A stretch of 64,000 nucleotides of DNA from positions 124,001 to 188,000 of IMG/VR virus record IMGVR_UViG_3300042889_001272. One strand, 5' to 3'. Position 1 is the stretch's first letter, and each line of letters opens with the position of its first letter. Below, in pieces: positions 18,952 through 60,675 of the stretch. The notes beneath the pieces were generated by a model. It did not search any database. It was not told the origin of the DNA and saw nothing but the letters and a program-made list of their open reading frames with translations. The position numbers and the translations under genes are program-made.

Positions 18952-19296
18952 ATGTTCATACTCATGTCAATAAAACCTGCTTGCCTTAATAAAACAACAA
19001 GCCCATTTGTGAAATCAGACGGGTCACTTCTTCCATGTTGTTGGGCAAGTACTAGTTCTGACACTATTAAATTTCTAGGCAAAGAAAAATATTCACAATT
19101 AAATTTATATCATCATACTGTTGATGAAATTTATTCATCTGATGCTTATAAATTAATAAAATCAAAAATATTAGGCGAAAATCCTTTTGATATATGCAAA
19201 CAGTGGTGTAATGTGTTGCGGCGATCACAGCGACAAGACTACTTCATAGATTCATCGGAAATAGATGACTACATTAATAAGTATATTACTTTATAA
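18952..19296 (+). CDS. stand-alone SPASM/twitch-type Fe-S domain protein
   Basis: C-x8-VKSDGSLLPCCW...NL....DEI...CKQWC; ACTAAATA motif at 18932-18939. Confidence 0.7.
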   Translation: MFILMSIKPACLNKTTSPFVKSDGSLLPCCWASTSSDTIKFLGKEKYSQLNLYHHTVDEIYSSDAYKLIKSKILGENPFDICKQWCNVLRRSQRQDYFIDSSEIDDYINKYITL

Positions 19297-19300
19297 TTTT

Positions 19301-19972
19301 ATGTATAAATTAAAGACCCAAGTAATAGAATTAGAACTAACTTCAAAATGCACACTGCTATGCCCTGAATGTGCTAGAACCATGGATAAAGAAGAAACTA
19401 AAAACAAATGGAATTTTGGTGAGTTAGATATAGAAATTATAGAAAAATTGGCCAGCCAAACTCCTTACATAAGAACATTTAATTTTTGTGGTGGTTACGG
19501 TGATCCAATTTATCATAGCAGACTATTTGATATAATTGATATTTGCCATCGTTATAATAAATCAATTCACATAGAAACTGCGGGCAATCTTAGAAGCAAA
19601 GAATGGTGGAATAAATTGTCATTAATCCTCGGTGAACGCGATTCTATTTGTTTCAGTGTAGACGGATTAAAACATAGTAATCACATTTACAGAATAAATT
19701 CCAATTGGGATAGCATATTGAATGCCATGACTATCATGAGTGAATCATCATGCCATACGAAATGGAAATGGATATTGTTCAAATCTAATCAAGATGATGT
19801 TTTGGAAGGTTACAAATTAAGCAAGAAACTTGGTATTAAAAAATTTGAGCTAGTGGAAAGCGGTAGAATAACTCCGGGGAATGAGCCTACTAAATCAGTA
19901 AAGCAGATTTTAGCAGAGTTAAGAGAATATAACGAAACACAAGGACTTGACAACTATATTATTTTAAAGTAA
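19301..19972 (+). CDS. radical SAM protein (core only; likely start 19301)
   Basis: CTLLCPEC, CGGYGDP, IETAG, FSVDG, KWKWILF. Confidence 0.88.
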   Translation: MYKLKTQVIELELTSKCTLLCPECARTMDKEETKNKWNFGELDIEIIEKLASQTPYIRTFNFCGGYGDPIYHSRLFDIIDICHRYNKSIHIETAGNLRSKEWWNKLSLILGERDSICFSVDGLKHSNHIYRINSNWDSILNAMTIMSESSCHTKWKWILFKSNQDDVLEGYKLSKKLGIKKFELVESGRITPGNEPTKSVKQILAELREYNETQGLDNYIILK

Positions 19973-19975
19973 AAT
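19947..19975 (+). promoter_or_regulatory. sigma70-type promoter for thyX
   Basis: TTGACA-N17-TAAAAT. Confidence 0.65.
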
Positions 19976-19997
19976 AATACTTTTAAAGAAGTTATAA

Positions 19998-20882
19998 ATG
20001 ACACTAAGAACAGAAATTAATTTTGAAACAGATAAGAACTATCTTCCAGTATTGGATCATGGTTTTGTAGGTCTTGTTGACTACATGGGCAGTGATAGCG
20101 CCATCGTTCAAGCCGCTCGTGTTAGTTATGGTGCTGGGACAAAACAAGTTCAAGATGATAGAAACCTAATCCGGTATCTAATGCGTCACGAACATACTAC
20201 ACCTTTTGAAATGTGTGAGGTAAAGTTCCACATTAAACTTCCTATCTTCGTTATGCGACAGTTGGTACGTCATCGTACTGCCAGCATGAACGAATACAGT
20301 GCTCGTTATAGTGTGCTTACAGATGAGTTTTACATTCCCGAACTAGAACAAATCCAAAAGCAAAGCACAAGTAACAAACAAGGGCGTGAAGATGCCGAGT
20401 GGGGCTTTGAAGAAAAGCGTGGCGTTCAACATGCCTTCCAACGTAGCTTTCATAATGCATACAAAGAATATGCAAGTTTGCTAGGTAAGGAAGATTCTGG
20501 ACTAGCACGTGAGTTGGCTAGAAGTGTGCTTCCGGTAGGCGGATATACAGAATTGTATTGGAAAGCCAACTTGAAGAACTTTTTACACATGGCTCGCTTG
20601 CGTATGGATCCACATGCACAATGGGAGATCCGTGAGTTTGCAGGTGCTATGTATAACTTGGTTAAACCTTTGTTCCCAGAGGCTTGCGTGGCATTCGAGG
20701 ACTACGCTGTTAACTCAGTTAAGTTGAGTACTGGAGAATATCAGCTTGTTAAGAGTTTAATCAGCAAAGAAAAATGGGCTACTATGGTTACAAAATACGG
20801 CAATGACGAAAAAGCCCTGGGACAAGACGTAGGGCTTGGTGCTCGTGAACTCAAAGAGTTTAAAGAAAAATTAGGCTTGTAA
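19998..20882 (+). CDS. thyX: FAD-dependent thymidylate synthase
   Basis: AARVSY, HTTPFE, RQLVRHRTASMNEYSARY, ARSVLP, HAQWEIR. Confidence 0.97.
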   Translation: MTLRTEINFETDKNYLPVLDHGFVGLVDYMGSDSAIVQAARVSYGAGTKQVQDDRNLIRYLMRHEHTTPFEMCEVKFHIKLPIFVMRQLVRHRTASMNEYSARYSVLTDEFYIPELEQIQKQSTSNKQGREDAEWGFEEKRGVQHAFQRSFHNAYKEYASLLGKEDSGLARELARSVLPVGGYTELYWKANLKNFLHMARLRMDPHAQWEIREFAGAMYNLVKPLFPEACVAFEDYAVNSVKLSTGEYQLVKSLISKEKWATMVTKYGNDEKALGQDVGLGARELKEFKEKLGL

Positions 20883-21425
20883 AGGATCAACGCTGATTTC
20901 ATTTATATGAAACTCAGCGGGTTGTTCTAAAATCCATTTAATATAACTAGCCGCACCCTGAATAGGAATTGTTTTCCTGTCAGGGTGTTTTGCTTGTACA
21001 TTACTTAAACTGCCAAAGCTAATTAATGTGACTCTGGGGTTCTTTGCCCAGACTCCGGACATGCCTAGACTATTAGCGTAATCGCGCAATGCTTTCTTTT
21101 CAGCATTATAAAGCCAATCTGTGGCTTTCATCACTCTGTCAGTAGTACTACCTATACAAATAATCAAAGTTTGTTTGCCTGCTAGTTTAAGTTTCTTGTA
21201 TACCGCTTCGAGTAGCAAAACTTGATTAAACTTCCATAATGCACTATTAATAATTACTGCATCATAATCAACACTCATCTCGGCAAATACTTGTTGATTC
21301 TCTGCTTTAGTTAAATCTAAATCATGAGTTGTTCTACTTACAAATGTTAATTCATGTTGTGTTAACTCTAAATTTAGTGCCTCTGCTAGACCAAAATCTG
21401 GATTACCTGATATTAATATTTTCAT
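20871..21425 (-). CDS. short-chain dehydrogenase/reductase-like protein
   Basis: ILISG..FGLA Rossmann start, IINSA, IGS, YxxxK (YNAEK). Confidence 0.7.
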   Translation of the reverse strand: MKILISGNPDFGLAEALNLELTQHELTFVSRTTHDLDLTKAENQQVFAEMSVDYDAVIINSALWKFNQVLLLEAVYKKLKLAGKQTLIICIGSTTDRVMKATDWLYNAEKKALRDYANSLGMSGVWAKNPRVTLISFGSLSNVQAKHPDRKTIPIQGAASYIKWILEQPAEFHINEISVDPLQA

Positions 21426-22588
21426 AAGAATGTTGTATCTCCTGGGAACAAAGGTAATTTAGTGCCTGGCGCACGTTTTGGAATCTTACTGTCAGCACTA
21501 CTCACACAACTTGTTCCGCCACAGGGCATTGGTTTATCGTATAACTTGAAGCCGGTTTCGATATGTCCTAATGGAACTTCACTACAACTGTAACTACGTT
21601 TTACTGTGCCATCTGGTTCGCGGATAATAATACTTCGATAGCCACTGCTACACTCCCAACCATTGAAGTTGTTAAAGTTGAATGCGTTAAAACGTTCTGC
21701 CTGATCCATGAACCATGGATTTCCTTCTTTATCAACAAATTCGATTTGATAATGAGGGTCAACATCGACTTGTTTTTTACGACTAGGATCGGCTCTATCA
21801 ATTATAAAAGTAGGTTTTGGACGTTGAACAAGGCCTGCGGCTAATGCTTTTTCTTCTGTGTAAGCACGTTGTGGCATACCATTGTGTAACTTAGCCAACA
21901 TCTCGGGTGTATAACCATCTACTACACGGCTTGCTGTGGGATCGCTTTGTGGCTTGAGTGTAACGTTAATACCTCTATTATGAAAGTATAAACTTAGATC
22001 ATAAATCTCGTTGAACTGCTCTGGAACCATGACCATGTTGATAGTAATCTGAGTGTCATATTCTTGACACAAGACTAACTTGTCAGCAAACTCTTCAACC
22101 TTCTTATCAGTGTCGACGTGTTCACGATGACAACTTGCTGTGATACTAGCACGATGGAAGTGCTTGACTGCTGGTACATACTTTTCTTCAAACCATTTAA
22201 TCGGTCGACTCATGTTACTGGTCATATGTACACTAGTATAGTTTGTGTTAGCCGCATCATTGTTTAAGTGATTAAGGATATCAATGTACGCAGGATGGAA
22301 TGTGGGTTCTCCGCCACTTAAACTAAAGTGGAAACTATTAAATCCATTTTCTCTTGCTTGACGTTTGATCTCGTCCACAGTATGCAACATCAAAGGAGTG
22401 GGACGATGATCTTTAGTATCACTGCGAGCATAAGGCCAGCAATAACTGCAACGATAGTTACAGTAGCGTCCTAGTAGCCACGATACGGTAAACATATCGC
22501 GGTATAGCATTGTTCTTTGTCCAACTCTAACTAGATCCTTAAACGGAATCTTAGTAAAGTCATAATCACTGGTTTTTAAATCACTCAT
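21422..22588 (-). CDS. radical SAM protein with C-terminal SPASM/twitch
   Basis: CNYRCSYC, SGGEP, TSN; WECSSG...DG...C...CVSSAD. Confidence 0.92.
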   Translation of the reverse strand: MSDLKTSDYDFTKIPFKDLVRVGQRTMLYRDMFTVSWLLGRYCNYRCSYCWPYARSDTKDHRPTPLMLHTVDEIKRQARENGFNSFHFSLSGGEPTFHPAYIDILNHLNNDAANTNYTSVHMTSNMSRPIKWFEEKYVPAVKHFHRASITASCHREHVDTDKKVEEFADKLVLCQEYDTQITINMVMVPEQFNEIYDLSLYFHNRGINVTLKPQSDPTASRVVDGYTPEMLAKLHNGMPQRAYTEEKALAAGLVQRPKPTFIIDRADPSRKKQVDVDPHYQIEFVDKEGNPWFMDQAERFNAFNFNNFNGWECSSGYRSIIIREPDGTVKRSYSCSEVPLGHIETGFKLYDKPMPCGGTSCVSSADSKIPKRAPGTKLPLFPGDTTFL

Positions 22589-22811
22589 TTTGTTCGTAGA
22601 TAAATTTTACGTCCTTGCCCGGACCGACTTCGCTGGGCATGCCACCGTATTGCTTGACATACCATTCTATGGCTGCGATGTACCAACCTTGACTGTTATG
22701 TCTACTTTCTTTGTTAAAAATATATATATTGTCGTTGGTTGCTGGCATCGTACTTATAATGCGGGCCGCTTCTAATTGTAATTTGCGTAATGGAAGATCT
22801 TGTATATTCAT
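22581..22811 (-). CDS. hypothetical protein
   Basis: 76 aa, overlaps both neighbours. Confidence 0.65.
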   Translation of the reverse strand: MNIQDLPLRKLQLEAARIISTMPATNDNIYIFNKESRHNSQGWYIAAIEWYVKQYGGMPSEVGPGKDVKFIYEQNE

Positions 22812-23785
22812 TATACATATTTATTTTTTGTTGCCATCAAATCTGGCATACACCAACAAGTGTTATAGGGACAGATTACTCCGGAAGTAGGTAAGTTCAT
22901 AATATTTGATTCTTTCCAATTACCAAAATCTTCGTCTGTGCCTATCATACATCCACTACCCCTGCGTATTGTGCCATTGGCATCAAGTGTTATTTTATCA
23001 ACTCCTATACCACAGCTCCAATCTTTAAATTTGTTTTGTTCATCCACAAGTATCTGTCCTGTGACTTCTTGCAAGCGTTGTTGCCTCAAATATGTAAAAC
23101 TAGACTTATATATACTCTTTCTGGACTTGGCTACTTTTCTGTTTGCTTGTATATAGTTCATTTGTTCTTGTGTATATAATACTTTACTATCTGCAACAGC
23201 TTCGTATCTGTTATCCACTAATTTTAATTCGAGACTGGTAAACTCTTTGACATTGTTTAATATGTACTCGCGAGCTTCGAGTACCTTATCCCAAACTGCT
23301 GGCCAAGCAAGAATCAATATAGTCTTATATTCATTGTCCAATGCATTTATACTTTCCACAAACTTTTCTACACTTTTGACCTGTGTAGGATGATAACTGA
23401 ACACCACCGAAGATACCTGTGTACCTATTCTACGCCAATAATCTTCAGGCATTACTCCATTGGTAATAAATTTAATATTACTATCTGGACTATTTTTTTT
23501 AATTATATCTATAGCTTCGGGTAGTTTTTTCCATATAGCAAGTTCGCCGCCCAGTAATGTATATTCAAGGCGCCGACTTTTTCCATAATGTGATTGTAAC
23601 TCGCGTGTAGTGTAATCAATGCTGTCTAAACTAGGCCAGCCAAAACTACCATCATGTATTATGCTGGGACAATATTCGCAGGCATAGTTACATACGTTGG
23701 TCATTGTCCAATCAATGATTACCCAATCAGGATCTGCCTGTATCCTATCAAACAGTAAAGTTTTCATATAATTCCGGGCAGACAT
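22811..23785 (-). CDS. radical SAM protein with C-terminal SPASM/twitch
   Basis: CNYACEYC, LGGE, ITNG; WSCGIG...C...CPYNTCWC. Confidence 0.92.
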   Translation of the reverse strand: MSARNYMKTLLFDRIQADPDWVIIDWTMTNVCNYACEYCPSIIHDGSFGWPSLDSIDYTTRELQSHYGKSRRLEYTLLGGELAIWKKLPEAIDIIKKNSPDSNIKFITNGVMPEDYWRRIGTQVSSVVFSYHPTQVKSVEKFVESINALDNEYKTILILAWPAVWDKVLEAREYILNNVKEFTSLELKLVDNRYEAVADSKVLYTQEQMNYIQANRKVAKSRKSIYKSSFTYLRQQRLQEVTGQILVDEQNKFKDWSCGIGVDKITLDANGTIRRGSGCMIGTDEDFGNWKESNIMNLPTSGVICPYNTCWCMPDLMATKNKYV

Positions 23786-24947
23786 CCCGTAGACTTTGAT
23801 TGCGTTTATTATCTAATAATGATGTAAACTTTTTAAAATCATGCCAGTTTGCACTTGTTTTTGTCATAGTAAGATTTTTTTTCATATTATCCAAAAAGAA
23901 TTTATTAGCAGGATCGTATTTTTGTTCTACATACTCTATTTGTGCAAGAGCTTTTTGTTTAATACTATCTGGTGCTGTGGCAACATGCAAGTATTGTGGG
24001 TGTGTAAGTAATCTATATTCTATCCACTCGACGGGTCGTTTAATAAGAGATTCTGCCCAGTCGTAAAACTCTTTTACGTTTAGCATATTGTATATTTGAT
24101 AGCTGGCATTGGGACTGAATAAAAAGTTCTTGTATTCGTTCCTGAACTTGCATAACATGTCTATTTTACCCGTGAGTTCTTCCCAAGTGCATTGCTCTCC
24201 GCCACGCATGTATTCGAATAACTTGCCCGTACCATCTACACTGATATTAATATTAACTGATTTTGCTTTGCGTAAACGTAATAAATGTTCTTCCCGTAGC
24301 AAACTACCATTGGTTGTTATACTCAGTCTAACATTCTTTAGTATACCCGAATTGTCCAGCACATCAAATACATCCAATAAATCATTGTTAATAAAAGGTT
24401 CTCCGCCGGTTACAGTTATCATACGAAGATCTGTTAATTGTGGCAATAAGTTGGTGACAAATGTCATTAAGTCATTTCTGTTCTTTGTGTAGTCTACATA
24501 TTCTTCTCGCTTGAATCCATTGTCTCTCAGCAACTTATCGTCATTGATCCAACTGTTACTGAACATGCTGTTGCACATTCTACATTTAAAATTGCAGAGA
24601 TTACTAGTATTCAAAAACAAATGATATATGTTATTTCCAGTTTTACTGTTTTCAAAGTCTTTACTGTCCCATATATCACCATTCCACCAACGCTCATTAT
24701 TTTTCCAATTAAGACGCTGGCTTACCACGCCCTGTTTCTCTCGCTCGTGACAGGTATTACAGCCCGGTAGATTCCAAACTCCATCCACCATGTCTGTACG
24801 TAATTGCACAAACTTTCCATTGTCCCAGACATTTTGGTCTGTCATTAGTCCCATGGGCGTTGAACTCATCATGCATCTACTTATAAAACCAGCAGGATGT
24901 GTAGATATACTTGCAAATGGAATTAAACAAACTTTATCAGGTATCAT
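23748..24947 (-). CDS. radical SAM protein with N-terminal twitch-like domain
   Basis: CLIPF...RC...GCNTC; CNFKCRMC; TGGEP; TTNG. Confidence 0.92.
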   Translation of the reverse strand: MIPDKVCLIPFASISTHPAGFISRCMMSSTPMGLMTDQNVWDNGKFVQLRTDMVDGVWNLPGCNTCHEREKQGVVSQRLNWKNNERWWNGDIWDSKDFENSKTGNNIYHLFLNTSNLCNFKCRMCNSMFSNSWINDDKLLRDNGFKREEYVDYTKNRNDLMTFVTNLLPQLTDLRMITVTGGEPFINNDLLDVFDVLDNSGILKNVRLSITTNGSLLREEHLLRLRKAKSVNINISVDGTGKLFEYMRGGEQCTWEELTGKIDMLCKFRNEYKNFLFSPNASYQIYNMLNVKEFYDWAESLIKRPVEWIEYRLLTHPQYLHVATAPDSIKQKALAQIEYVEQKYDPANKFFLDNMKKNLTMTKTSANWHDFKKFTSLLDNKRNQSLRDVCPELYENFTV

Positions 24948-28221: not shown

Positions 28222-28224
28222 TAA

Positions 28225-39276: not shown

Positions 39277-39280
39277 AATA

Positions 39281-40235: not shown

Positions 40236-40251
40236 AATATTTTAAAAATAT

Positions 40252-41004: not shown

Positions 41005-41014
41005 GATTTTTCCT

Positions 41015-45432: not shown

Positions 45433-45456
45433 TATACTAGTATTTAATATTTTTAC

Positions 45457-50601: not shown

Positions 50602-51022
50602 GTGTTCTACCTGCGTCGTCTTGTAATCGAATTACATCATCTAATTCTGTTGTGCTGGTTTCCATGAATTCTAAATCAGTGTCAGCGATTACTCTGTGTA
50701 CATAGCCTGGTTGTACATTGAATACAACACCGGCTTTAAGTTCTATACGTTCGAATGTATATTCGTAGGCTTCTACTTGCCTAGACGTCATGCCTTGTTC
50801 TAAAAACTTGGCAATGTCCAGTGGTTCTCGACTGCGATGTAACATGCCTGTGCCGCTGAGAACGTAGTTAGTTTCTATCTTATATTCGTGTACTTGTAAG
50901 CTGGTTCTATTGCCCGCTTTGAATAAAATACGTTTACTGGCATACGGAGTTTGGCTTCCATCTGCAATCCAAAGCTCGTAGCCCCAGTGTTTAGTTACTT
51001 TTTTAATTTTCATCATGCCCAT
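50573..51022 (-). CDS. cupin (mannose-6-phosphate isomerase-like)
   Basis: KHWGYE, SLQVHEYK.ET, PGYVHR, EtST.ELDDVIRLQDD.GR. Confidence 0.85.
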   Translation of the reverse strand: MGMMKIKKVTKHWGYELWIADGSQTPYASKRILFKAGNRTSLQVHEYKIETNYVLSGTGMLHRSREPLDIAKFLEQGMTSRQVEAYEYTFERIELKAGVVFNVQPGYVHRVIADTDLEFMETSTTELDDVIRLQDDAGRTHGRISYEHE

Positions 51023-53549: not shown

Positions 53550-54426
53550 AGTTATAAATTGAATTCAATTTTGCTTCCACTGCGGTGCTTCGCATCACTG
53601 CATATTCAAATGGATTTACGCAGTTTGGGTGTATGGATAATTCTGTCATGTAATTATATAATAAACAACCGGGTCCTAGCCATAATACTTTATCCAAGTT
53701 TAAACCACATTGATTCTTAAATTGATATTCCATGGGGCGGGAGATTTTATGAAAAGAATATAGATCTCCCATTAAATCCATGGTAGGACTATCACCATAA
53801 AATAACACATCATCAAAATTATTAGAATTAAATTCTGAGGCAAATTTGCTTACGGGTGTAGCTGTATAACAAACGCCTGGCCAAACTCGTTGTAAAGGAA
53901 ATCGATGACTAGGGTTGTAAATGACATCCAATCTTGCCTTAATAACTAAGTCATATTGAAAACTTTGTTTCAATTCATAGTCTCTTTTAAGCATTAAACT
54001 TCTTGCAAAGCTATAGAACATTGGATCCCAGGCACGTTTGAATTTTTCTTTATCAAATTCTTGTTGTATAAAACCCTTTGGCTTATATGTTTCTATAATG
54101 GCATCTCGATCATTGTGAATCACATCAGTATAAACAGTGATATCTGTTTTGGGCAAGCGCCATGTATTGGTATCCCATGTATGAATAAAGTAATCAGTTT
54201 CTACATCCAAGCCATTTTCTGGGTGCGGATATTCGTGTTCAAAGAAACGTTTAATGTTGGCAACACTTTCCTGCCAATAACGTGCTTGACCACTGAAGCA
54301 AACTGCAATTCTAAATTTTCTTTTAGGTTCCGCTGATAGCGGCTCTGGTATTTCAACCTGAATAGGCGCACTACGCAAATTGCCAGTAAGTGAGTCTATT
54401 TCAACATTAAATAAGCTCATGTCCAC
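53509..54426 (-). CDS. hypothetical protein, SGxxR family
   Basis: IAVCFSGQAR, FIHTW, YDLVIKARLD, DD.LFYG. Confidence 0.65.
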   Translation of the reverse strand: MDMSLFNVEIDSLTGNLRSAPIQVEIPEPLSAEPKRKFRIAVCFSGQARYWQESVANIKRFFEHEYPHPENGLDVETDYFIHTWDTNTWRLPKTDITVYTDVIHNDRDAIIETYKPKGFIQQEFDKEKFKRAWDPMFYSFARSLMLKRDYELKQSFQYDLVIKARLDVIYNPSHRFPLQRVWPGVCYTATPVSKFASEFNSNNFDDVLFYGDSPTMDLMGDLYSFHKISRPMEYQFKNQCGLNLDKVLWLGPGCLLYNYMTELSIHPNCVNPFEYAVMRSTAVEAKLNSIYNYEEIRRKWFEWYI

Positions 54427-55255
54427 CTAATTCTCCTTCTAATCCTGATTTTATTTTTCTATCTAAGTAGTCCTGACTCCTGAATATTTTAGGATCAACT
54501 GACAATGGGGATATTTCTATGTTTAACATCTTTGCATAAAAATACAATGCGTGTTCTGGGCCCACTAGATTATTACTGTTAAAACTTTTCTTTCCTATAA
54601 TCGGCAACCATCTATAAAATTCACAGATGCGGTTAAATGTAACAGTGTCAGCAAACCAAAATACGTCGCCCAATCTATGAAAAGGAAATTGTTCAGGATC
54701 TTTTCTAGTATGACAAGTATAAAAAGTATTAACTTCTGGATACACTAGATCATATCTTACAAAATGATCAATTTGATAATCATCAAAAAACATGTCGTAT
54801 CTTATCTTGATGCATAAATCATAATGAAAATCATTTTCGAACTCGTGAATTTTCTTTAAGTGAGCGGCTCTCATCACGCTATAGAATTGGCCGGCGGCCC
54901 AATCTAATTTAGTTTCACCGTGCTCATTGAGATGTACAGCATTTTGTTCGCGCACATCTTTGATTTTATTTTTGTTAGAAAATTCATCTTCAAATACACA
55001 CGCTTTGGGTTTTATTATATCTACAAATCTCTTCTTTTCATCATCAGATATTTTGTCTCCGGGCACGGTATTATAATCCCAGCCTTCGTGCATTAACAAA
55101 CGATGGGGCGGCGAATTATAATCCCATACATGACAAAATATGTCTATGTCATCGACTTCGTATGATTGTTTGATTTTATCAATTAGTTTAAACCACGTAT
55201 GATAACATTTTTCCCATGTTCGGGGTTGTCCGCTGATACAAATAGCCACTTTCAT
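54407..55255 (-). CDS. hypothetical protein, SGxxR family
   Basis: VAICISGQPR, FCHVW, YDLCIKIRYD, GD.FWF, GPE. Confidence 0.65.
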   Translation of the reverse strand: MKVAICISGQPRTWEKCYHTWFKLIDKIKQSYEVDDIDIFCHVWDYNSPPHRLLMHEGWDYNTVPGDKISDDEKKRFVDIIKPKACVFEDEFSNKNKIKDVREQNAVHLNEHGETKLDWAAGQFYSVMRAAHLKKIHEFENDFHYDLCIKIRYDMFFDDYQIDHFVRYDLVYPEVNTFYTCHTRKDPEQFPFHRLGDVFWFADTVTFNRICEFYRWLPIIGKKSFNSNNLVGPEHALYFYAKMLNIEISPLSVDPKIFRSQDYLDRKIKSGLEGELGGHELI

Positions 55256-56652
55256 TTAGCATTTTTCCATTTAGTATAGTAAGGTTCAAACTCAGGAAAT
55301 GTAGCCAAAAAGTTTGTTCCTCTGCGTTTGTCGTGCTCATCCACAAACGCAACTAGATCCTTTTGATATACTGTAACTTCCTCTGGATCTTTTTGATTCA
55401 TTGTTAATTCATATATACGTTTAAATTTTTCAGCTTCCCATTTGAAAAATCCTTGATTAGCACTTCCATACCATTCACCGTTTTCTAAATTACGATACAT
55501 CATTGTTACTTGATTGAAAATATATTCTTTTGCCCAACTTTCTGGCATAACATGAAAGATGCTTTGGTGCGCTGGGTGCCTTAGAAACGGTGCATCTAAA
55601 ATTAACGGAGCATGAACATTGTTCCAGCCACCGAACTCGTTTTTAATATCTAATACATCTTGTAAGAATAACGAATATGTAGGTACACTAAGAACATTGT
55701 AGGTACTCATGATAGTAATAGTACACTCTGGGATTTCTTTTAATACCCTGCGGATGTTACTTAACCAAAGTTCATAATTCATACCATCACGAATATATTC
55801 TGCAGCCTTGCCATGAGCATCACAGCTTGTAAAGATTTTAAACTTTTTAACTTTCTTTTCTTCGCAGATAATTTTAACTTTTTCAAGGAATCTGTCAAAT
55901 AACTGTGGTGGCACACACAAATTGCTGTTAATGCTCAGGTGTATATCTGGATTAGGATTTTCAATGACATAGTCAAGAACTTTAAAAGTATCTTTACTTA
56001 GTAAAGGTTCTCCGCCAGTTATCCTAAAGTGCTGAAGTTCTTTATAAACAGTGGGCCACCATTTCCAGAATGCTTCCACATAAGGATTGTATTGATTGTG
56101 CGGAATAGGCATTTGATCAATTTGTTTAAGGCCAGCAATATCATTGAAACGGCCGTGTGTTGGATATGGGCCATGTTGTTTAACTTCTTCCATCCACAGA
56201 CTACTGACCTGTGGACTACAATAGCTACATTTAAAATTACAGACGTTACTGAAACTGACTTCCAGATAACTAGGAACAACGTCACTGTCCCATGGCAAAT
56301 TGCGAACTTCGTCAAAGTGAGGCTTTGCCCATACATCATAGCTCTTATAGATTCTATCGCTGAGTGCATCTGGTGCGCTGTCCTCTACTTTCCAGCAATA
56401 GTCACATTCTTTAGGACGGGCACCTTCCAACATTAACTTACGCTGTTCTTTTTTAAACTGTGTATTATGTAATGCACTGGGATTAGCGGCTAGTTCGTCT
56501 AAAGGAATTTTGTGCGTAGTGGGATGGTGACAACTGTGGTTGTGACCTGTTTGCAAATGCAGAGTTACCTGTTTCCACTTGGCAATACAAAAACTAGGAC
56601 TAACGTCGTTAATCTTTTTTTGAAATGCAATGATATCTTTATTGTGTTCCAT
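55252..56652 (-). CDS. radical SAM protein with N-terminal twitch-like domain
   Basis: CIAKW...SCHH...CDYC; CNFKCSYC; TGGEP; NSN. Confidence 0.92.
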   Translation of the reverse strand: MEHNKDIIAFQKKINDVSPSFCIAKWKQVTLHLQTGHNHSCHHPTTHKIPLDELAANPSALHNTQFKKEQRKLMLEGARPKECDYCWKVEDSAPDALSDRIYKSYDVWAKPHFDEVRNLPWDSDVVPSYLEVSFSNVCNFKCSYCSPQVSSLWMEEVKQHGPYPTHGRFNDIAGLKQIDQMPIPHNQYNPYVEAFWKWWPTVYKELQHFRITGGEPLLSKDTFKVLDYVIENPNPDIHLSINSNLCVPPQLFDRFLEKVKIICEEKKVKKFKIFTSCDAHGKAAEYIRDGMNYELWLSNIRRVLKEIPECTITIMSTYNVLSVPTYSLFLQDVLDIKNEFGGWNNVHAPLILDAPFLRHPAHQSIFHVMPESWAKEYIFNQVTMMYRNLENGEWYGSANQGFFKWEAEKFKRIYELTMNQKDPEEVTVYQKDLVAFVDEHDKRRGTNFLATFPEFEPYYTKWKNAK

Positions 56653-56653
56653 A

Positions 56654-57640
56654 TTAATTTATCGAGTTATCTACTTGATTTTCTTTGACCTGGGCACCAA
56701 GTCTGGGTGGATTAATCCAGCTTTCCTTGAACATTTTACTTCCGTTATAGTCAAGTTCTGCAATCTCTAATCCTAGGTTTGTTCTCAATGATTCTCCTAG
56801 TTTGAATATTTCGTCTTGTAGTTTTTTCTTGTCATATGTCCAGCCACTGGCTAAACATTTTTCAGACTCTCCGGCAAACTGTGGACGGACAGCATTTTTC
56901 CAAAAATCATCATGCCATTCAAAATCTCTCACCAATGTGAAATCAAAGCCATCTCTGTCAATATTAGACATATAGCAACCTAATCTAGTTCCGTACATGG
57001 CCCATAGTCCATTGTATACATCAGCACCTACACTAGCCCATACCAGCAAACGTTTATAATTTCTATCGTGTACTCGTTGTTTGAGTTGCCTAGGATCCAC
57101 GGTTACTCCGCCTTCTAATGCTAGTTTAACACCTTCACGGAAGCCTGCGCGATATGCTTGGTAAGCACTGGCATTATTAAAAACGTCACTGTATATGTTA
57201 TTCATTTGATGATAGTAAATGTCCCAGCAAAAGTCAACTTGTGCTTTGGGATCTTCTGCGGCTTCGTGTGTACGCATTTGTTCTACCACATGTTTGGGCC
57301 AAAGTTTAATGCCGCCATTGCCATAAACTAAACCGTTGACAACATTCTTGCCTGCCCATGATATAACGTCATGTCGACTAATTTTCGACATATCCAATTC
57401 AATGCTTAAAAAGTCATCACGTACAATGTTATCTGCATCCACAGTAATAAATCTATCTGTTTCAGCGGCAGCGGCAGCGGCTTTGTGCGCGGCATCAAAT
57501 CCTTTTACTCCATGCACACGCTTGGCCCATGGAGCTTTGTTACATAAGTCAGAATAGTTCTTATCGGCGTTGGGTTCGTCGTAGCTTAAAAATATAATAT
57601 CAAAACTGGTAATCGGTGCTAGCATCTTCTTCCTTTGCAT
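56654..57640 (-). CDS. DxD glycosyltransferase-like protein, paralog family member
   Basis: FLSYDEPNAD, RVHGVKGFDAAH, TVDAD, NGLVYGNGGIKLW, RAGFREGVKL. Confidence 0.6.
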   Translation of the reverse strand: MQRKKMLAPITSFDIIFLSYDEPNADKNYSDLCNKAPWAKRVHGVKGFDAAHKAAAAAAETDRFITVDADNIVRDDFLSIELDMSKISRHDVISWAGKNVVNGLVYGNGGIKLWPKHVVEQMRTHEAAEDPKAQVDFCWDIYYHQMNNIYSDVFNNASAYQAYRAGFREGVKLALEGGVTVDPRQLKQRVHDRNYKRLLVWASVGADVYNGLWAMYGTRLGCYMSNIDRDGFDFTLVRDFEWHDDFWKNAVRPQFAGESEKCLASGWTYDKKKLQDEIFKLGESLRTNLGLEIAELDYNGSKMFKESWINPPRLGAQVKENQVDNSIN

Positions 57641-58589
57641 GTAAATGAAAATAGTTACATACTAATTTAACTTCTTTTTCACTTGTTAATTTTATCTCAA
57701 AATTATTATAGTTGTTAAGTTGGTTACTACTTAACTTGATAGAACCCAGCATCATTGTCGGGTCATGTTTTTCACAAATGTATAATTCTATGTCTTCATT
57801 TAATCTAAATGTGTTGATGTCTTGTATTGTACTTTGTAATTTTAACACATTACCCGTCTGTTTGTAAAGCAAATTTGGAAGATAATCTAAATTATTTTCT
57901 GCAACTAAGTTTTCATTTGATCGGTAGTCGTATGATATAATTTGGTTGTCGTTGTAATATAAAAATCCAATGTTTTTCAATCCCAACACATCGTCTGGCA
58001 ACCATCTACACTTAAAACTAATATCGTGTTTTTCAAATAATTCTCTAGTAGACACAGTGAATTTTCCAAACAGCTTGGATCTTTCATTTTTATCAATACA
58101 ATATATTTCTATGTAATCGGGCAATTCTTCCAAGTGTTTTTCTGAAGTTTTTTCCAATAACATATTCAATTTAAAAATATTATAGTCAAAAATTAGCTGT
58201 ATTTTTTTAGTTACTACATCACAGTGTAAGTGTATAAAGGACCGTTCTGAATTTGTGGCGAAAATAAAGTCAAATTCCCCTTTTCTGCGTTGCTTGTTAT
58301 GTGTTAATTCAAATTCATTGGTTGTTTGATTTTTTTTAACTATGAGCTTAGACAGTGATAATTTGTTTTCGAATAATTTTTTTGTTAATGTAGAAGCAGT
58401 TATAACAGCTATCGAATTTCTTTTCTCTGATGGAACAATTTCCATGGGTGATGCAACAACAGGCAAACCTGTAAGTCTATTATATTCGACATACACTTTT
58501 TGTTCGTTATTTGTATTTCTACTTTTAAGAACTCTTTTTTGTATGTCAAATTCTTCGACTTGATCGTCATCACTTACACAGTTGCTCAT
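57600..58589 (-). CDS. hypothetical protein
   Basis: 329 aa ORF overlapping both neighbours. Confidence 0.75.
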   Translation of the reverse strand: MSNCVSDDDQVEEFDIQKRVLKSRNTNNEQKVYVEYNRLTGLPVVASPMEIVPSEKRNSIAVITASTLTKKLFENKLSLSKLIVKKNQTTNEFELTHNKQRRKGEFDFIFATNSERSFIHLHCDVVTKKIQLIFDYNIFKLNMLLEKTSEKHLEELPDYIEIYCIDKNERSKLFGKFTVSTRELFEKHDISFKCRWLPDDVLGLKNIGFLYYNDNQIISYDYRSNENLVAENNLDYLPNLLYKQTGNVLKLQSTIQDINTFRLNEDIELYICEKHDPTMMLGSIKLSSNQLNNYNNFEIKLTSEKEVKLVCNYFHLHAKEEDASTDYQF

Positions 58590-59404
58590 TTATTTTTAAA
58601 ATTTTCTAATATTTCATCAGTGAGCCATCCCTTGGATTCATATTTAACCAAACCATGTTGTACAAAATTTTCAATTTTAAGAGTACCTTTATCATTAACC
58701 CAGTAAGTTAAAAATTCACTCCAACGCTTGGTCCAATTGTTATTAATATAATTATTTTCTTGTTTTGACAGATCTATGCAATGCATAAAATCAAAGGTTG
58801 ATATCTTCTTTTCAGTTATAGACTGCAATAAGGATAGCACCCAACTGGGCCATATATATTTGGGAAACGGTGGCATTTCATGTTCTTTGTCTGCAAAGAA
58901 ATTTATATAATTGTCTTGATCATAACTGGAACATAACACACTGGCCAGTCCTAGAATGTAATCACAGCCCTTGTCTTTGTTGAAAAATATTGCATTTGGA
59001 ATACTGCTGACTCCAAAATTTTTAAATTCGATGCTGGCAGTACTGTACATCACTGGATTTACAATTTCATTATTAAACAAATAGCGATGTTTTGGAAGAA
59101 CAATGGGATCTAAACTTCGCAGATTTTCCCATATTCCTAGATCAAAATAAGTCAACAATTGATCGGGCAGTAAGCCAATAGTCTTGGTATACGGACTCAT
59201 TAACATTGATTTGAAATAGCATAATGTTGGATTCGTTTCATCTAAAAAAATGACATTGTCCGCTTCTATAAATTTTGCATCCGTACTATTAACAATGACA
59301 CTGACAGGTCTAATAGAATCTATTTTTTTAATGCTTGTTATTAATAGATTTATTTCTACAGAGTTTTCATCAGTTCCATTAACTATTAAATAACCTTCAC
59401 TCAT
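58586..59404 (-). CDS. GT-A-like hypothetical protein (degenerate)
   Basis: GYLIV, SPYTKTIGLLPD aligns with SPYRQTLMIDVD of the next gene. Confidence 0.5.
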   Translation of the reverse strand: MSEGYLIVNGTDENSVEINLLITSIKKIDSIRPVSVIVNSTDAKFIEADNVIFLDETNPTLCYFKSMLMSPYTKTIGLLPDQLLTYFDLGIWENLRSLDPIVLPKHRYLFNNEIVNPVMYSTASIEFKNFGVSSIPNAIFFNKDKGCDYILGLASVLCSSYDQDNYINFFADKEHEMPPFPKYIWPSWVLSLLQSITEKKISTFDFMHCIDLSKQENNYINNNWTKRWSEFLTYWVNDKGTLKIENFVQHGLVKYESKGWLTDEILENFKNK

Positions 59405-60293
59405 AGATTAACTCCTTGAGTTTAGTGTAGTGTCTTAAAATTGCCATTTTATTCATCAAGTGTATGTTTTCATTTATTATTCTACTGCAAATATTTTTCC
59501 ATAACTCTTTGGGATCTGGACATAATAACACGTAGTCATTGAGAGATTTAAACTCTACAATATCATCAATTTGCTCACTGAAGCGCATTACTTTTCCTGG
59601 CAGTACTGCCACTGTATTTCCCACTGTTTGGCCATTTAGTATATGTGCGGCAATACTGGCAGCATAGTCTGTTCTGAATAACACTCCGGGAAACTTGTAT
59701 AACCACTTGTAATAATGATAGTTTTCTTTAACATGTTCCCAAACACCAAAGAACAAACGAGCAACTTCACTGTCATTTCTCCAATACACAACTGTGCTCC
59801 ACCACATGTCTATGCCATCTGGATGAAGTTTTTGTTCCCAGATTCTGGGCTTATAATTGCGAACGCTGACAGCGTCTTTATACATTGCAAGTTCGTAGTC
59901 TGTGTCGAACACTGCATCTAAACTATCATTGCCCACAATGTAGTCGACATCTATCATCAATGTTTGTCGGTAAGGGCTTTTTTGAAAAATGCTGTGTTTA
60001 TTTTTATTATTGAACTGTGTGCTGAATTCTGTCCAAGGACTGTCCCTGTGCATTCTTGTATTACGTTCGTGCTGAATATCTTCCACAATGATATGATCAA
60101 AGGTATAAGATAATTGCTCAGGTGTGAGTTCCGCAGTTAACGCATTAAGAGTGTTTAAATCTGTGAGCAAAGTGACATGATTGTTTTTCATGTGCAGTTT
60201 TACATTTGCTGCCGCTATTATTGCCAATCTTTCATAGGCTATTTTGCCGTTGTTATACGCAATCAGCAAAACACCTTTATCAAATTTAGACAT
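59397..60293 (-). CDS. GT-A-like (GT8-like) putative glycosyltransferase
   Basis: GVLLIAYNN, SPYRQTLMIDVDY (DxD), WSTVVYW, FRTDYAASIA, H.MNK. Confidence 0.55.
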   Translation of the reverse strand: MSKFDKGVLLIAYNNGKIAYERLAIIAAANVKLHMKNNHVTLLTDLNTLNALTAELTPEQLSYTFDHIIVEDIQHERNTRMHRDSPWTEFSTQFNNKNKHSIFQKSPYRQTLMIDVDYIVGNDSLDAVFDTDYELAMYKDAVSVRNYKPRIWEQKLHPDGIDMWWSTVVYWRNDSEVARLFFGVWEHVKENYHYYKWLYKFPGVLFRTDYAASIAAHILNGQTVGNTVAVLPGKVMRFSEQIDDIVEFKSLNDYVLLCPDPKELWKNICSRIINENIHLMNKMAILRHYTKLKELIYE

Positions 60294-60667: not shown

Positions 60668-60675
60668 TATTTATA
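60668..60675 (-). promoter_or_regulatory. T4-type late promoter TATAAATA
   Basis: Exact T4 late consensus on - strand in the intergenic gap at the head of the super-cluster. Confidence 0.7.

What the first reader, a model, noticed from the sequence alone, without database searches (positions are those of the whole stretch)
18952..60293. About 41 kb phage-encoded modification super-cluster: candidate undescribed virion-decoration pathway
Seen: a nearly continuous, overlapping-gene, - strand block with 14 radical SAM genes, free SPASM-type genes, 4 SGNH-like, 4 paralogous DxD GT-like, 3 SGxxR-family and 2 GT8-like proteins, a carbamoyltransferase, a methyltransferase-like protein, an Asp/Asn hydroxylase, a nitroreductase, an SDR and a sugar-nucleotide module. 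It lies directly downstream of and co-oriented with tail/baseplate genes, behind a TATAAATA at 60668. Known: these enzyme classes build and tailor glycans and modified peptides. Inference: this looks like a natural-product-scale pathway expressed late, which fits modification of the virion (protein cross-links plus a tailored glycan) better than DNA base modification or host metabolic support.
Basis: partly seen in the sequence, partly recalled or inferred. Interest (0 to 1): 0.92.

Follow-up and report, generated by a model that had tools for sequence, protein, structure and literature searches.

The report
Phage radical-SAM glycan-tailoring gene island
A 235-kb uncultured freshwater phage carries a real, 40-kb back-to-back operon of 43 soluble enzymes, including 14 radical SAM genes, four glycosyltransferase-like proteins and a sugar-activation module; it most likely builds and radically re-tailors an unusual sugar chain, but what that chain is attached to (virion, host surface, DNA or a small carrier) remains unproven.

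Summary
The cluster is real. It has 43 co-directional minus-strand genes (20871-60639), 99.9% coding, with 37 of 42 junctions overlapping. There are 14 radical SAM genes (15 domains), all with an intact CxxxCxxC motif. Eight genes (nine domains) belong to NCBIfam NF033640, an uncharacterised family with the twitch domain at the N-terminus.

The four "DxD" paralogues fold as GT-A glycosyltransferases. The carbamoyltransferase, the sugar-1-P nucleotidyltransferase/kinase, the Asp/Asn hydroxylase and the nitroreductase are confirmed. The SGNH-like label holds at motif and profile level. The GT8, SGxxR-triplet, SDR and methyltransferase labels are not verified.

Gene order is conserved across many uncultured phage contigs. 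Each of the nine N-twitch paralogues has its own orthologue in chromosomal multi-radical-SAM clusters of Bdellovibrionota, where the commonest partners are GT2 glycosyltransferases.

No cluster protein has a membrane segment. The TATAAATA motif is present here, but 18 of 28 relatives carry a sigma-70-type promoter at the same spot, so late timing is not a conserved property.

Best reading: a cytoplasmic glycan-assembly and radical-tailoring pathway. Virion decoration is plausible but unproven, and protein cross-linking is unsupported. Similar radical SAM cassettes in phage "host recognition clusters" are already noted in the literature without a mechanism.

The parts
60668..60675 (-). TATAAATA (T4-type late promoter motif) heading the operon
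   Evidence: One of only 2 copies in 64 kb (9.2 expected). Kept in close relatives, replaced by a sigma-70-like promoter in 18 of 28 relatives.
60286..60639 (-). First gene, 117 aa, unknown function; conserved head of the module
   Evidence: Orthologue upstream of the 55252-type radical SAM in 37 of 54 viral loci. No Pfam or PHROG hit.
59397..60293 (-). 298-aa protein with GT8-like motifs (IAYNN..., IDVDY); unverified glycosyltransferase
   Evidence: Alignment A6. No PDB or Pfam hit. Orthologue present in 45 of 54 loci.
57600..59404 (-). Two unknown proteins (57600, 58586), found only in close relatives
56654..57640 (-). GT-A-fold DxD protein (family A2), directly upstream of radical SAM 55252
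   Evidence: An A2-family gene ends <400 nt upstream of the 55252 orthologue in 58 of 74 loci.
55252..56652 (-). N-terminal-twitch radical SAM (NF033640)
   Evidence: 337.8 bits against a cut-off of 170. 570 related stretches in IMG/VR.
53509..55255 (-). Paralogue pair 53509/54407 (CFSGQPR...HTWD motif), unknown fold
   Evidence: Weak DUF7796 hit, E 0.018.
51013..53549 (-). SGNH-like 52593 (DUF6071), unknown 51803, SGNH-like 51013
46926..51022 (-). Sugar module: cupin 50573, sugar-1-P nucleotidyltransferase + APH-type kinase 49048, SnoaL-like 48717, shikimate-DH-like 47980, GatZ/KbaZ aldolase-like 46926
   Evidence: Order conserved in at least 6 contigs.
45457..46929 (-). NodU/CmcH-type carbamoyltransferase
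   Evidence: Pfam 180.5 and 114.7 bits. 524 related stretches in IMG/VR.
43034..45432 (-). Three more GT-A-fold DxD paralogues (44689, 43716, 43034)
42187..43041 (-). Family A7, possibly a Rossmann/methyltransferase-like protein (unverified)
   Evidence: Alignment A7. Spermidine synthase hit only at E 1.6. Sits in the conserved module A2>A7>s76.
39281..42190 (-). Radical SAM 41015, nitroreductase 40252, radical SAM 39567 with its separate SPASM gene 39281
37093..39276 (-). 117-aa unknown protein 38923 and two SGNH-like paralogues 38052/37093
28225..37100 (-). Array of N-twitch radical SAM genes 35838, 34366, 33099, 30554 (fused double domain, 850 aa) and 28225, plus radical SAM 29860 with its split Cys-rich domain 29525
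   Evidence: Syntenic with a Bdellovibrionia chromosome. Each paralogue has its own orthologue clade.
26821..28221 (-). 466-aa unknown enzyme-like protein (family A3), also present in the Bdellovibrionia cluster
26096..26836 (-). Asp/Asn beta-hydroxylase family (PF05118) 2OG oxygenase
   Evidence: The same family occurs twice in the Bdellovibrionia cluster.
23748..26106 (-). Two N-twitch radical SAM genes (24937, 23748)
22811..23785 (-). Radical SAM 22811 (group with 21422 and 29860)
22581..22811 (-). s76: highly conserved 76-aa three-helix protein with a conserved tail; a partner or adaptor of the GT-A-like proteins
   Evidence: Found fused to an A2 domain in protein P0249.
20871..22588 (-). 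Radical SAM 21422 and the last gene 20871 (184 aa, weak SDR-like hit); the 3' end overlaps the convergent thyX by 12 nt
18952..20882 (+). Convergent plus-strand unit: SPASM 18952, radical SAM 19265 (paralogues of 39281/39567), ThyX 19998
   Evidence: Arrangement kept in L003 and L006.
17690..17737 (+). Tandem TTGACT-N17-TATAAT and TATAAATA after a terminator hairpin; heads the plus-strand unit that ends in thyX
60694..63998 (-). Upstream co-oriented fibre-like or structural genes. 60694 carries a (GY)n / GGGYGYGN repeat; 61775 is tail-fibre-like; 62749 is a structural protein of jumbo myoviruses; 63366 is part of a giant virion protein.

Best explanation
The island encodes a soluble, cytoplasmic pathway that activates sugars, assembles a short glycan and then rebuilds and decorates it.

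Proposed steps:
1. A kinase/nucleotidyltransferase fusion, with a cupin, an aldolase-like enzyme and a dehydrogenase-like enzyme, makes one or more unusual NDP-sugars.
2. Four GT-A-fold DxD proteins (and possibly 59397) transfer the sugars.
3. The carbamoyltransferase, the SGNH-like esterases/acyltransferases, the 2OG hydroxylase and the flavin nitroreductase decorate the product.
4. Nine position-specific N-terminal-twitch radical SAM domains, plus five other radical SAM enzymes, abstract hydrogen atoms from defined sugar carbons. This would oxidise, epimerise, deoxygenate or bridge the sugars, as twitch-domain enzymes do in aminoglycoside pathways.

The pathway has no membrane, flippase or polymerase component, and in this phage it lies behind a late-type motif next to fibre genes. 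The acceptor is therefore most likely a cytoplasmic phage macromolecule, with virion or fibre proteins as the first candidate. The small conserved protein s76 would act as an adaptor or carrier for the GT-A-like enzymes.

Shown: gene content, folds and families, linkage, conservation, orthology with Bdellovibrionota clusters, and absence of membrane segments.
Inferred: the glycan nature of the product, sugar chemistry by the radical SAM enzymes, and the acceptor.
For: - Families and intact catalytic motifs.
- The N-terminal domain of the N-twitch family aligns to the twitch domain of BtrN, a carbohydrate-oxidising radical SAM enzyme (E 1.3e-3).
- The A2 model (pLDDT 81, pTM 0.80) matches only GT-A enzymes. 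The best PDB hit is the PBCV-1 A64R capsid-glycosylating transferase (E 6.6e-4, prob 1.0). Viral hits include the mycobacteriophage Che8 glycosyltransferase. Some A2 homologues carry Pfam GT2.
- An A2 gene lies directly upstream of the 55252-type radical SAM in 58 of 74 viral loci.
- In 76 Bdellovibrionota-dominated genome loci, the commonest non-radical-SAM neighbours are GT2 glycosyltransferases (12 and 10 loci). A UDP-sugar pyrophosphorylase and a methyltransferase edge the chromosomal cluster.
- Gene order 55252>...>45457>...>41015 is conserved at 30-90% identity in at least 6 contigs.
- Each of the nine N-twitch paralogues sits in its own well-supported clade with bacterial orthologues, implying distinct specificities.
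- No hydrophobic segment occurs in any of the 49 proteins (max KD19 1.46).
- TATAAATA heads the operon here, and fibre-like genes lie upstream.
- s76 is fused to an A2 domain in P0249.
Against: - No acceptor was identified, and no member of NF033640 has a known reaction.
- The best core matches of the radical SAM domains also include peptide maturases (CteB, SkfB, anSME) and nucleotide enzymes (viperin, MoaA).
- The TM-scores of the GT-A matches are low (0.26-0.39 to PDB), and the window's A2 proteins miss Pfam GT2 (E 0.11).
- Most relatives have a sigma-70-type rather than a late promoter at the operon head. That suits early functions such as host-surface or DNA modification at least as well.
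- Soluble GT-A enzymes can act on lipid-linked intermediates using host flippases, so the absence of membrane proteins is not decisive.
- The fibre-like genes are found upstream in only 8-17 of 54 related loci.
Confidence: 0.4

Rival explanations
1. Host envelope glycan remodelling. The island supplies unusual NDP-sugars, peripheral glycosyltransferases and tailoring enzymes that hijack the host's own lipid carrier, flippase and ligase. This alters the O-antigen or capsule and blocks superinfection. It is the reading published for pelagimyophage 'host recognition clusters'.
For: - PMC7029224 describes a ~44-kb hypervariable region beside tail fibres with GTs, LPS genes and radical SAM cassettes, and proposes O-chain modification.
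- 18 of 28 relatives have a sigma-70-type (early-like) promoter at the operon head.
- The gene set resembles an O-antigen/CPS locus: NDP-sugar module, several GT-A enzymes, SGNH enzymes, a carbamoyltransferase.
Against: - None of the 49 proteins has a membrane segment, and there is no Wzx/Wzy/ABC exporter, initiating phosphoglycosyl transferase or Gtr-type protein.
- This phage's operon head has a late motif and no clear -35 element.
- The ~45-kb chromosomal counterpart in Bdellovibrionia shows no exporter in the Pfam lists.
Confidence: 0.2
2. Scaffold-borne or ribosomal-peptide-derived glycoconjugate. A small protein (s76, or an unrecognised precursor) is modified by the radical SAM/SPASM-twitch enzymes and the Asp/Asn hydroxylase, then glycosylated and methylated. 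This resembles mycofactocin (MftA/MftC, GT2 MftF, methyltransferase MftM). Alternatively, structural proteins such as the Gly-Tyr-repeat protein are cross-linked.
For: - s76 is as conserved as the best-conserved enzymes (72% mean column identity).
- It sits in a fixed module A2>A7>s76>radical SAM>N-twitch radical SAM in at least 10 loci.
- It has a conserved exposed tail with invariant Ser, Pro and Gly.
- SPASM/twitch enzymes are typical peptide maturases, and the Asp/Asn hydroxylase family acts on proteins.
- A flavin enzyme is present.
- The mycofactocin precedent for GT2 plus methyltransferase on a peptide-derived core: PMC7491314, PMC9679996.
- The GGGYGYGN-repeat protein lies just upstream.
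Against: - s76 is a three-helix bundle without the beta-sheet of an RRE and has no structural match.
- It occurs fused to enzyme domains, which suits an adaptor better than a substrate.
- It is absent from the Bdellovibrionia chromosomal cluster.
- No peptidase, exporter or RRE was found.
- The GY-repeat protein exists only in the closest relatives.
Confidence: 0.15
3. DNA hypermodification. The glycosyltransferase-like and radical SAM enzymes build a complex adduct on phage DNA bases to evade restriction.
For: - The island abuts thyX. In minimal relatives the N-twitch radical SAM ends 7-37 nt from thyX.
- Relatives have early-type promoters.
- The phage already invests in DNA modification: a 7-deazaguanine module lies at 57-4164.
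- From my own knowledge, radical SAM enzymes take part in thymidine hypermodification. Virus-encoded GTs that hypermodify DNA are cited in PMC12619734.
Against: - The window contains no hydroxymethylase, base kinase or DNA-glycosylase-like transferase.
- The thyX here is an ordinary PF02511 match (198.6 bits).
- Orthologous clusters sit in Bdellovibrionota chromosomes next to rpoD-dnaG, where bulk DNA hypermodification is not expected.
- A 40-kb pathway is far larger than any known DNA-modification system.
Confidence: 0.1
4. Free small-molecule product. The island makes an aminoglycoside-like pseudo-oligosaccharide or nucleoside-type metabolite during infection, for example against competitors or host defences.
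For: - The enzyme palette recalls aminoglycoside or nucleoside-antibiotic clusters: BtrN-like twitch domain, NodU/TobZ-class carbamoyltransferase, APH-type kinase, shikimate-DH-like, SnoaL-like and nitroreductase enzymes.
- All proteins are soluble.
- PMC12801897 reports 'antibiotic synthesis' genes, including a radical SAM maturase, in a cyanophage.
Against: - No cyclitol synthase, aminotransferase, exporter or self-resistance gene was detected.
- Four or more glycosyltransferase-like proteins and a conserved protein partner (s76) point to a macromolecular acceptor.
Confidence: 0.1

Closest known systems
Host recognition cluster (HRC) of pelagimyophages and cyanomyophages (Zaragoza-Solas et al. 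2020, PMC7029224); T4-like marine viral genome with 12 radical SAM genes (Nishimura et al. 2017, PMC5332604)
   Same: Both are large (~35-45 kb) hypervariable regions beside tail-fibre genes of aquatic myoviruses that carry glycosyltransferases, sugar genes and radical SAM cassettes. Asp/Asn hydroxylase is common in both.
   Different: Those reports only list the genes; the first proposes host O-chain modification and the second Fe-S metabolism. Here the radical SAM set is resolved into NF033640 subfamilies with bacterial orthologues, a GT-A partner family and a small adaptor. The nearest cultured relatives of this phage's structural gene are jumbo myoviruses (Atu_ph07, CBB), and membership of the pelagimyophage group was not tested.
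Virus-encoded cytoplasmic virion glycosylation: PBCV-1 A64R, mycobacteriophage Che8-type glycosyltransferases, mimivirus fibril glycosylation
   Same: Both use soluble viral GT-A enzymes together with virus-encoded sugar-nucleotide synthesis. The A2 model's best PDB match is A64R, and its viral matches include the Che8 GT and a megavirus hydroxylase-GT.
   Different: None of those systems contains radical SAM enzymes. Virion glycosylation is not demonstrated here.
Twitch-domain radical SAM enzymes of carbohydrate pathways (BtrN; also sugar epimerases and dehydratases of aminoglycoside biosynthesis, from my own knowledge)
   Same: Both have one auxiliary-cluster twitch domain plus a radical SAM core. 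The N-terminal domain aligns to the BtrN twitch domain, and both occur in a sugar-pathway context.
   Different: Here the twitch domain is N-terminal (permuted), the family (NF033640) has no characterised member, and it occurs in arrays of 2-10 paralogues per locus.
Mycofactocin pathway (MftA-F, MftM; PMC7491314, PMC9679996)
   Same: Both combine a radical SAM/SPASM enzyme, a GT2-type glycosyltransferase, a methyltransferase-like protein, a flavin enzyme and a small conserved polypeptide.
   Different: No MftC, MftB or MftE equivalents pass their NCBIfam cut-offs. s76 is a folded 76-aa protein rather than a ~30-aa peptide, and it is fused to enzymes in some genomes.

Membership tests
NCBIfam NF033640 (N_Twi_rSAM, twitch domain-containing radical SAM protein) | Whole-protein HMM score at or above the curated cut-off of 170 bits | tested here: met
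   Seven genes were scored and gave 248.6-532.3 bits: 23748, 24937, 28225, 30554 (two stretches), 33099, 35838, 55252. 34366 was not scanned, but it groups with them by BLAST and in the tree.
NCBIfam NF033640 (N_Twi_rSAM) | Cys-rich twitch domain N-terminal to the radical SAM core, with an intact CxxxCxxC | tested here: met
   Pfam places SPASM before Radical_SAM. The Cys positions are invariant in A1. The N-terminal domain aligns to the BtrN twitch domain at E 1.3e-3. The CxxxCxxC motif is present in every domain.
Radical SAM superfamily (PF04055) | Pfam gathering score of 29.5 bits and the CxxxCxxC cluster motif | tested here: met
   13 of 14 genes are above the cut-off; 34366 scores 27.2 bits but has the motif.
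GT-A fold glycosyltransferases (GT2-like), for family A2 | Rossmann-like GT-A fold with a DxD motif | tested here: met
   D78 and D80 are invariant in A2. All top Foldseek hits are GT-A enzymes or nucleotidyltransferases of the same fold, although TM-scores to PDB are low (0.26-0.39).
GT-A fold glycosyltransferases (GT2-like), for family A2 | Significant match to a curated GT HMM | tested here: not met
   Pfam finds nothing at E <= 0.01; the best hit is Glycos_transf_2 at E 0.11 for 56654. Only a few database homologues carry PF00535 or PF13641.
GT-A fold glycosyltransferases (GT2-like), for family A2 | Nucleotide-sugar-dependent transfer activity | not testable with these tools
   Needs an enzyme assay.
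SGNH/GDSL hydrolases (37093, 38052, 51013, 52593) | Block I GDS motif near the N-terminus and a C-terminal catalytic His block; match to a curated HMM | tested here: inconclusive
   GDS and a C-terminal H are conserved. The families are mutually related by hhalign at 94-98%. Pfam gives only DUF6071 and Lipase_GDSL at E 0.039, and there is no PDB hit.
RiPP biosynthetic cluster | Identifiable precursor peptide, RRE/PqqD-like recognition element, and a leader peptidase or exporter | tested here: not met
   No PqqD/RRE, peptidase or transporter family was found in any ORF. The only small conserved protein (s76) is all-helical and is found fused to enzymes.
O-antigen / capsule biosynthesis locus | Membrane components: initiating phosphoglycosyl transferase, Wzx/Wzy or an ABC exporter | tested here: not met
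   No such Pfam families. No segment has a 19-residue hydropathy above 1.46.
T4-type late transcription unit | TATAAATA at about -10 of the start site, conserved in relatives | tested here: inconclusive
   The motif is present and well placed in this phage and its close kin, but 18 of 28 relatives have a sigma-70-like promoter instead. Transcription itself is not testable here.
Phage DNA hypermodification system | Base hydroxymethylase/kinase, or a DNA-directed transferase, linked to the cluster | tested here: not met
   None is found in the window. ThyX is a standard PF02511 match. The 7-deazaguanine genes form a separate module at 57-4164. The rest of the 235-kb genome was not examined.
Mycofactocin-type pathway | MftC-type maturase passing TIGR03962, plus MftB and MftA | tested here: not met
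   TIGR03962 hits score 20.7-48.4 bits against a cut-off of 265.

The most novel reading that the evidence does not exclude
Jumbo phages and predatory Bdellovibrionota share an ancient, modular pathway. In it, up to nine position-specific N-terminal-twitch radical SAM enzymes rebuild the sugars of a glycan made by a private family of GT-A transferases, working with a dedicated 76-aa adaptor or carrier. The result would be a new class of radical-tailored glycoconjugate. It may decorate the attachment fibres that both kinds of predator use to recognise their prey. The chemistry (the reactions of NF033640) would be new to enzymology.
Probability: 0.15. Interest if true: 0.9.

Novelty: new variant of a known kind. 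Interest (0 to 1): 0.72.

Why it matters
If the product is a glycan re-tailored by radicals, the island would add a large block of unknown enzymology. NF033640 has thousands of members and no known reaction. Its partner families have no Pfam or PDB relative.

It would also explain what the 'radical SAM cassettes' in the hypervariable host-recognition regions of abundant aquatic phages are for. That question has been noted since 2017-2020 and left open.

The pairing GT-A-like + N-twitch radical SAM (+ s76) is a compact, conserved module that can be expressed and assayed directly, which makes the question testable.

The one-to-one orthology with chromosomal clusters of Bdellovibrionota offers a possible culturable entry point if a cultured strain carries the cluster (only MAGs were seen here). 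It also hints at a shared surface chemistry between two kinds of bacterial predator.

Tried and rejected
- Megablast of 24 kb of the island against 50,697 phage records gave no match. tblastn found only 21-23% relatives in KVP40-like Vibrio phages and RsoM2USA, and the KVP40 neighbourhood was uninformative.
- Pfam at E <= 10 for 20 unannotated proteins gave only noise-level hits.
- Profile searches of six families (A2-A7) against PDB sequences were all negative. So was the 678-aa protein between the two hydroxylases in Bdellovibrionia.
- Generic sigma-70 promoter and terminator scans inside the block were at chance level: 88 found vs 82 expected, 98 vs 86, and 12-13 terminators vs about 12.
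- s76 as an RRE or carrier protein: the model is a three-helix bundle with no Foldseek match.
- The GY-repeat protein as a conserved substrate: it is found only in the closest relatives.
- 51803 as a third SGxxR member and 58586 as a second GT8-like protein: hhalign probability is below 1%.
- No tRNA or Rfam families occur in the window.
- Literature searches for an N-terminal twitch radical SAM, Bdellovibrio radical SAM clusters, or twitch sugar epimerases paired with GTs returned nothing in the open library.
- Two encoding-contig look-ups failed because tblastn match limits were used instead of ORF limits.

Full report
**What is in the window**

ORF listing and composition show one uninterrupted minus-strand run from 20871 to the window end, preceded by plus-strand genes. 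Between the TATAAATA at 60668-60675 and the convergent thyX there are 43 genes (20871..60639). This count includes a 76-aa gene (22581..22811) that fills the only apparent gap. 37 of 42 junctions overlap, the largest spacer is 24 nt, and 99.9% is coding. 18952-20882 is on the plus strand (SPASM, radical SAM, ThyX), and the first gene of the block (60286..60639) extends beyond 60293.

**Annotation**

Pfam finds the Radical_SAM domain in 14 genes and 15 domains, because 30554 is a fused double enzyme. It also finds two free SPASM genes, an Asp/Asn beta-hydroxylase, a nitroreductase, a two-domain carbamoyltransferase, a GatZ/KbaZ-like protein, a shikimate-dehydrogenase-like protein, a SnoaL-like protein, a MobA-like nucleotidyltransferase fused to an APH-type kinase, a cupin and a DUF6071 protein. 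NCBIfam refines the nucleotidyltransferase to the sugar-1-phosphate class and the carbamoyltransferase to the NodU type, all below equivalog cut-offs. Every radical SAM domain keeps CxxxCxxC. About twenty proteins have no Pfam hit even at E <= 10.

**The radical SAM genes fall into three groups**

The largest group has eight genes and nine domains: 23748, 24937, 28225, 30554 (two domains), 33099, 34366, 35838 and 55252. The seven of these genes (eight domains) that I scanned score 249-532 bits against NCBIfam NF033640, 'twitch domain-containing radical SAM protein' (cut-off 170); 34366 was not scanned but groups with them by BLAST and in the tree. In this family the Cys-rich auxiliary domain lies N-terminal to the core. 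The Cys ligands and the SAM-cluster motif are invariant across the paralogues and database relatives. A profile of the family matches the twitch domain of BtrN with its N-terminal 80 residues (E 1.3e-3). Its core matches radical SAM enzymes of all substrate classes. I found no paper describing this family's function.

**The unannotated families**

*A2 (DxD proteins).* The four DxD paralogues (43034, 43716, 44689, 56654; family A2) have no PDB or Pfam sequence relative. An AlphaFold model built on the family alignment is confident (pLDDT 81, pTM 0.80). It matches only GT-A-fold enzymes. The best PDB hit is the PBCV-1 A64R transferase that glycosylates the major capsid protein. Other hits include WrtF, TarS/TarP, hyaluronan and chondroitin synthases, and SunS/ThuS. 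In the viral structure library the hits are many phage and giant-virus glycosyltransferases, including that of mycobacteriophage Che8. TM-scores to PDB are low, so this is a fold-level assignment. The family has more than 6,000 database members, mostly tandem duplications of about 530 aa, and a few carry Pfam GT2.

*SGNH-like proteins.* Four proteins (37093, 38052, 51013, 52593) share a GDS...H pattern and are mutually related by profile comparison. This supports 'SGNH-like' without a curated match.

*Labels that remain unverified.* The pair 53509/54407 (CFSGQPR motif), 59397 (GT8-like motifs), 42187 (weak Rossmann/methyltransferase-like signal) and 26821 remain unassigned.

**Origin and relatives**

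Three anchor proteins are 100% identical to IMG/VR contig UViG_3300042889_001272 (235.6 kb). No cultured phage is close. A neighbouring structural protein is most similar (38-41%) to those of jumbo myoviruses such as Atu_ph07 and CBB.

The island is strongly syntenic in relatives. The order 55252 > 54407 > 53509 > 52593 > 51013 > 50573 > 49048 > 48717 > 47980 > 46926 > 45457 > A2 genes > 42187 > 41015 recurs in at least six independent contigs at 30-90% identity. The radical SAM array down to thyX recurs in two more.

More distant phages carry a miniature version: 60286-59397-...-A2-A2-N-twitch radical SAM, followed within 7-37 nt by thyX. The window's island therefore looks like an expansion at a fixed genomic site. 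An A2 gene directly precedes the 55252-type radical SAM in 58 of 74 loci.

**Cellular counterparts**

A scan of one genome per prokaryotic species found the N-twitch family overwhelmingly in Bdellovibrionota MAGs, usually 2-10 copies per 20-kb locus. On a 917-kb Bdellovibrionia contig, next to rpoD-dnaG-rpsU, there is a cluster of more than 15 radical SAM genes and two Asp/Asn hydroxylases. It also holds homologues of 26821 and 29525 and a 187-aa protein in the position of 20871, and it is edged by a UDP-sugar pyrophosphorylase and a methyltransferase. Part of it is collinear with window 28225-33106.

Across 76 genome loci, the commonest non-radical-SAM neighbours are GT2 glycosyltransferases. 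One 606-aa GT2 sits directly upstream of the radical SAM in 10 loci. A maximum-likelihood tree places each of the nine window domains in its own well-supported clade with bacterial orthologues (nine separate placements). The paralogues are therefore old, functionally distinct subfamilies and not recent duplications within the phage.

**A small conserved partner**

The 76-aa product of 22581..22811 (s76) is as conserved as the best-conserved enzymes (72% mean column identity). In at least ten loci it sits in a fixed module: A2 > 42187-like > s76 > 41015-like radical SAM > 34366-like N-twitch radical SAM.

An exhaustive profile search of 1.84 billion representatives finds only 57 relatives. Most are stand-alone. 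One is fused to the C-terminus of an A2 domain, and others are fused to a Cys-rich domain or an unknown domain. Its model is a confident three-helix bundle with a conserved extended tail and no structural match. I read it as an adaptor or carrier working with the GT-A-like enzymes. A substrate role is possible but less likely.

**Timing**

TATAAATA occurs only twice in 64 kb, against about 9 expected. One copy is ideally placed before 60286. The other (17730, plus strand) follows a terminator hairpin and a TTGACT-N17-TATAAT promoter, and heads the unit that ends in a radical SAM/SPASM pair and thyX. So the two late motifs drive convergent units that meet at 20871-20882, and the motif is not specific to structural genes.

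More importantly, among 28 distinct upstream regions of 60286 orthologues, 6 have TATAAATA, 18 have a canonical TTGACA-N17-TATACT/TATAAT, and 4 have neither. Late expression is therefore a feature of this clade, not of the system.

**Location of the products**

None of the 49 proteins examined has a hydrophobic stretch compatible with a membrane helix. No flippase, polymerase, exporter, initiating transferase, peptidase or RRE family was detected. The pathway is cytoplasmic and, on its own, cannot export anything.

**Interpretation**

The best-supported statement is that this is a glycan-type pathway. The evidence is sugar activation, several GT-A transferases, carbamoylation and acyl tailoring, and a radical SAM family whose conserved partners in both phages and bacteria are glycosyltransferases and whose auxiliary domain resembles that of a carbohydrate enzyme.

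From established knowledge of twitch-domain enzymes, I infer that the N-twitch enzymes abstract hydrogen from defined sugar positions to oxidise, epimerise, deoxygenate or cross-link them. The nine conserved subfamilies would each have their own regiospecificity.

The acceptor is the weak point. Three observations favour a phage macromolecule such as virion or fibre proteins: the soluble nature of all proteins, the late motif, and the neighbourhood of fibre-like genes. I rank this reading first at 0.4.

The published alternative is remodelling of the host O-chain through the host's own export machinery (PMC7029224). It fits the early-type promoters of most relatives and is not excluded (0.2). 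A scaffold- or peptide-derived glycoconjugate in the manner of mycofactocin (0.15), DNA hypermodification (0.1) and a free pseudo-oligosaccharide (0.1) remain possible.

The Gly-Tyr-repeat protein just upstream is suggestive, but it is confined to the closest relatives.

**Novelty**

Radical-SAM-rich T4-like viral genomes and radical SAM cassettes in phage host-recognition clusters have been reported, but only as gene lists (PMC5332604, PMC7029224). NF033640 already exists as a named but uncharacterised family.

As far as my searches reach, the following are new:
- the resolution of the island into conserved modules;
- the GT-A partner family and its fold;
- the s76 adaptor and its fusion to an A2 domain;
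- the one-to-one orthology with chromosomal clusters of Bdellovibrionota;
- the promoter-class switch at the operon head.

I rate the finding a new variant of a known kind (phage glyco/host-recognition island), with high but not extreme interest. The chemistry and the target are open, and they are directly testable.

Noticed in passing
window 57-4164 (+): A 7-deazaguanine (queuosine-precursor type) module: a GTP cyclohydrolase-like protein (57-794), a QueE-like radical SAM (1866-2726, a 15th radical SAM gene outside the island) and a 366-aa phrog_1569 protein (3064-4164). This suggests the phage modifies guanine in its DNA independently of the island.
   Followed up: partly
window 14939-17649 (+): A MoxR/AAA-type ATPase (phrog_1297) followed by a DUF2201 metallopeptidase with a VWA-like domain. 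This is a conserved pair of unknown role in phages.
   Followed up: no
window 17665-17780 (+): A compact regulatory region: a GC hairpin plus T-run terminator after 16456..17649, then TTGACT-N17-TATAAT, then TATAAATA, then a Shine-Dalgarno site and the ATG of a 76-aa ORF (17777..18007). The tandem early-type and late-type promoters head the unit that ends in thyX.
   Followed up: partly
window 60694-61773 (-): A 359-aa fibre-like protein with a Gly-Tyr low-complexity tract, (GY)n with four GGGYGYGN units. The tract length varies among close relatives (341-361 aa) and the protein is absent from distant ones.
   Followed up: partly
window 22581-22811 (-); protein P0249: The tiny, highly conserved family s76 has only 57 representatives among 1.84 billion proteins. 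It includes a fusion to a GT-A-like A2 domain and fusions to a Cys-rich domain and to an unknown domain.
   Followed up: yes
L048, L012, L088-L090 (JAUICP010000002.1, Bdellovibrionia): A chromosomal cluster of more than 15 radical SAM genes with two Asp/Asn hydroxylases next to rpoD-dnaG-rpsU. The N-twitch radical SAM family is strikingly concentrated in Bdellovibrionota among 185,579 species genomes.
   Followed up: partly
L010, L011, L050, L057 (MAG contigs labelled Crocinitomicaceae, Gammaproteobacteria MED685, Rickettsiales MED657, Neisseriaceae): These contigs carry the phage-type module, including s76, at 50-75% identity to the window. They may be phage contigs mis-binned into bacterial MAGs.
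   Followed up: no
window 40252-41154 / 41015-42190 (-): These two ORFs overlap by 140 nt. The nitroreductase Pfam match starts at residue 60, so the true start of 40252..41154 is probably further downstream than the longest ORF suggests.
   Followed up: no
window 30554-33106 (-) vs L048:5010-7596: The 850-aa double N-twitch radical SAM of the phage corresponds to two separate adjacent genes in Bdellovibrionia. This is either a gene fusion in the phage lineage or a split in the bacterium.
   Followed up: partly
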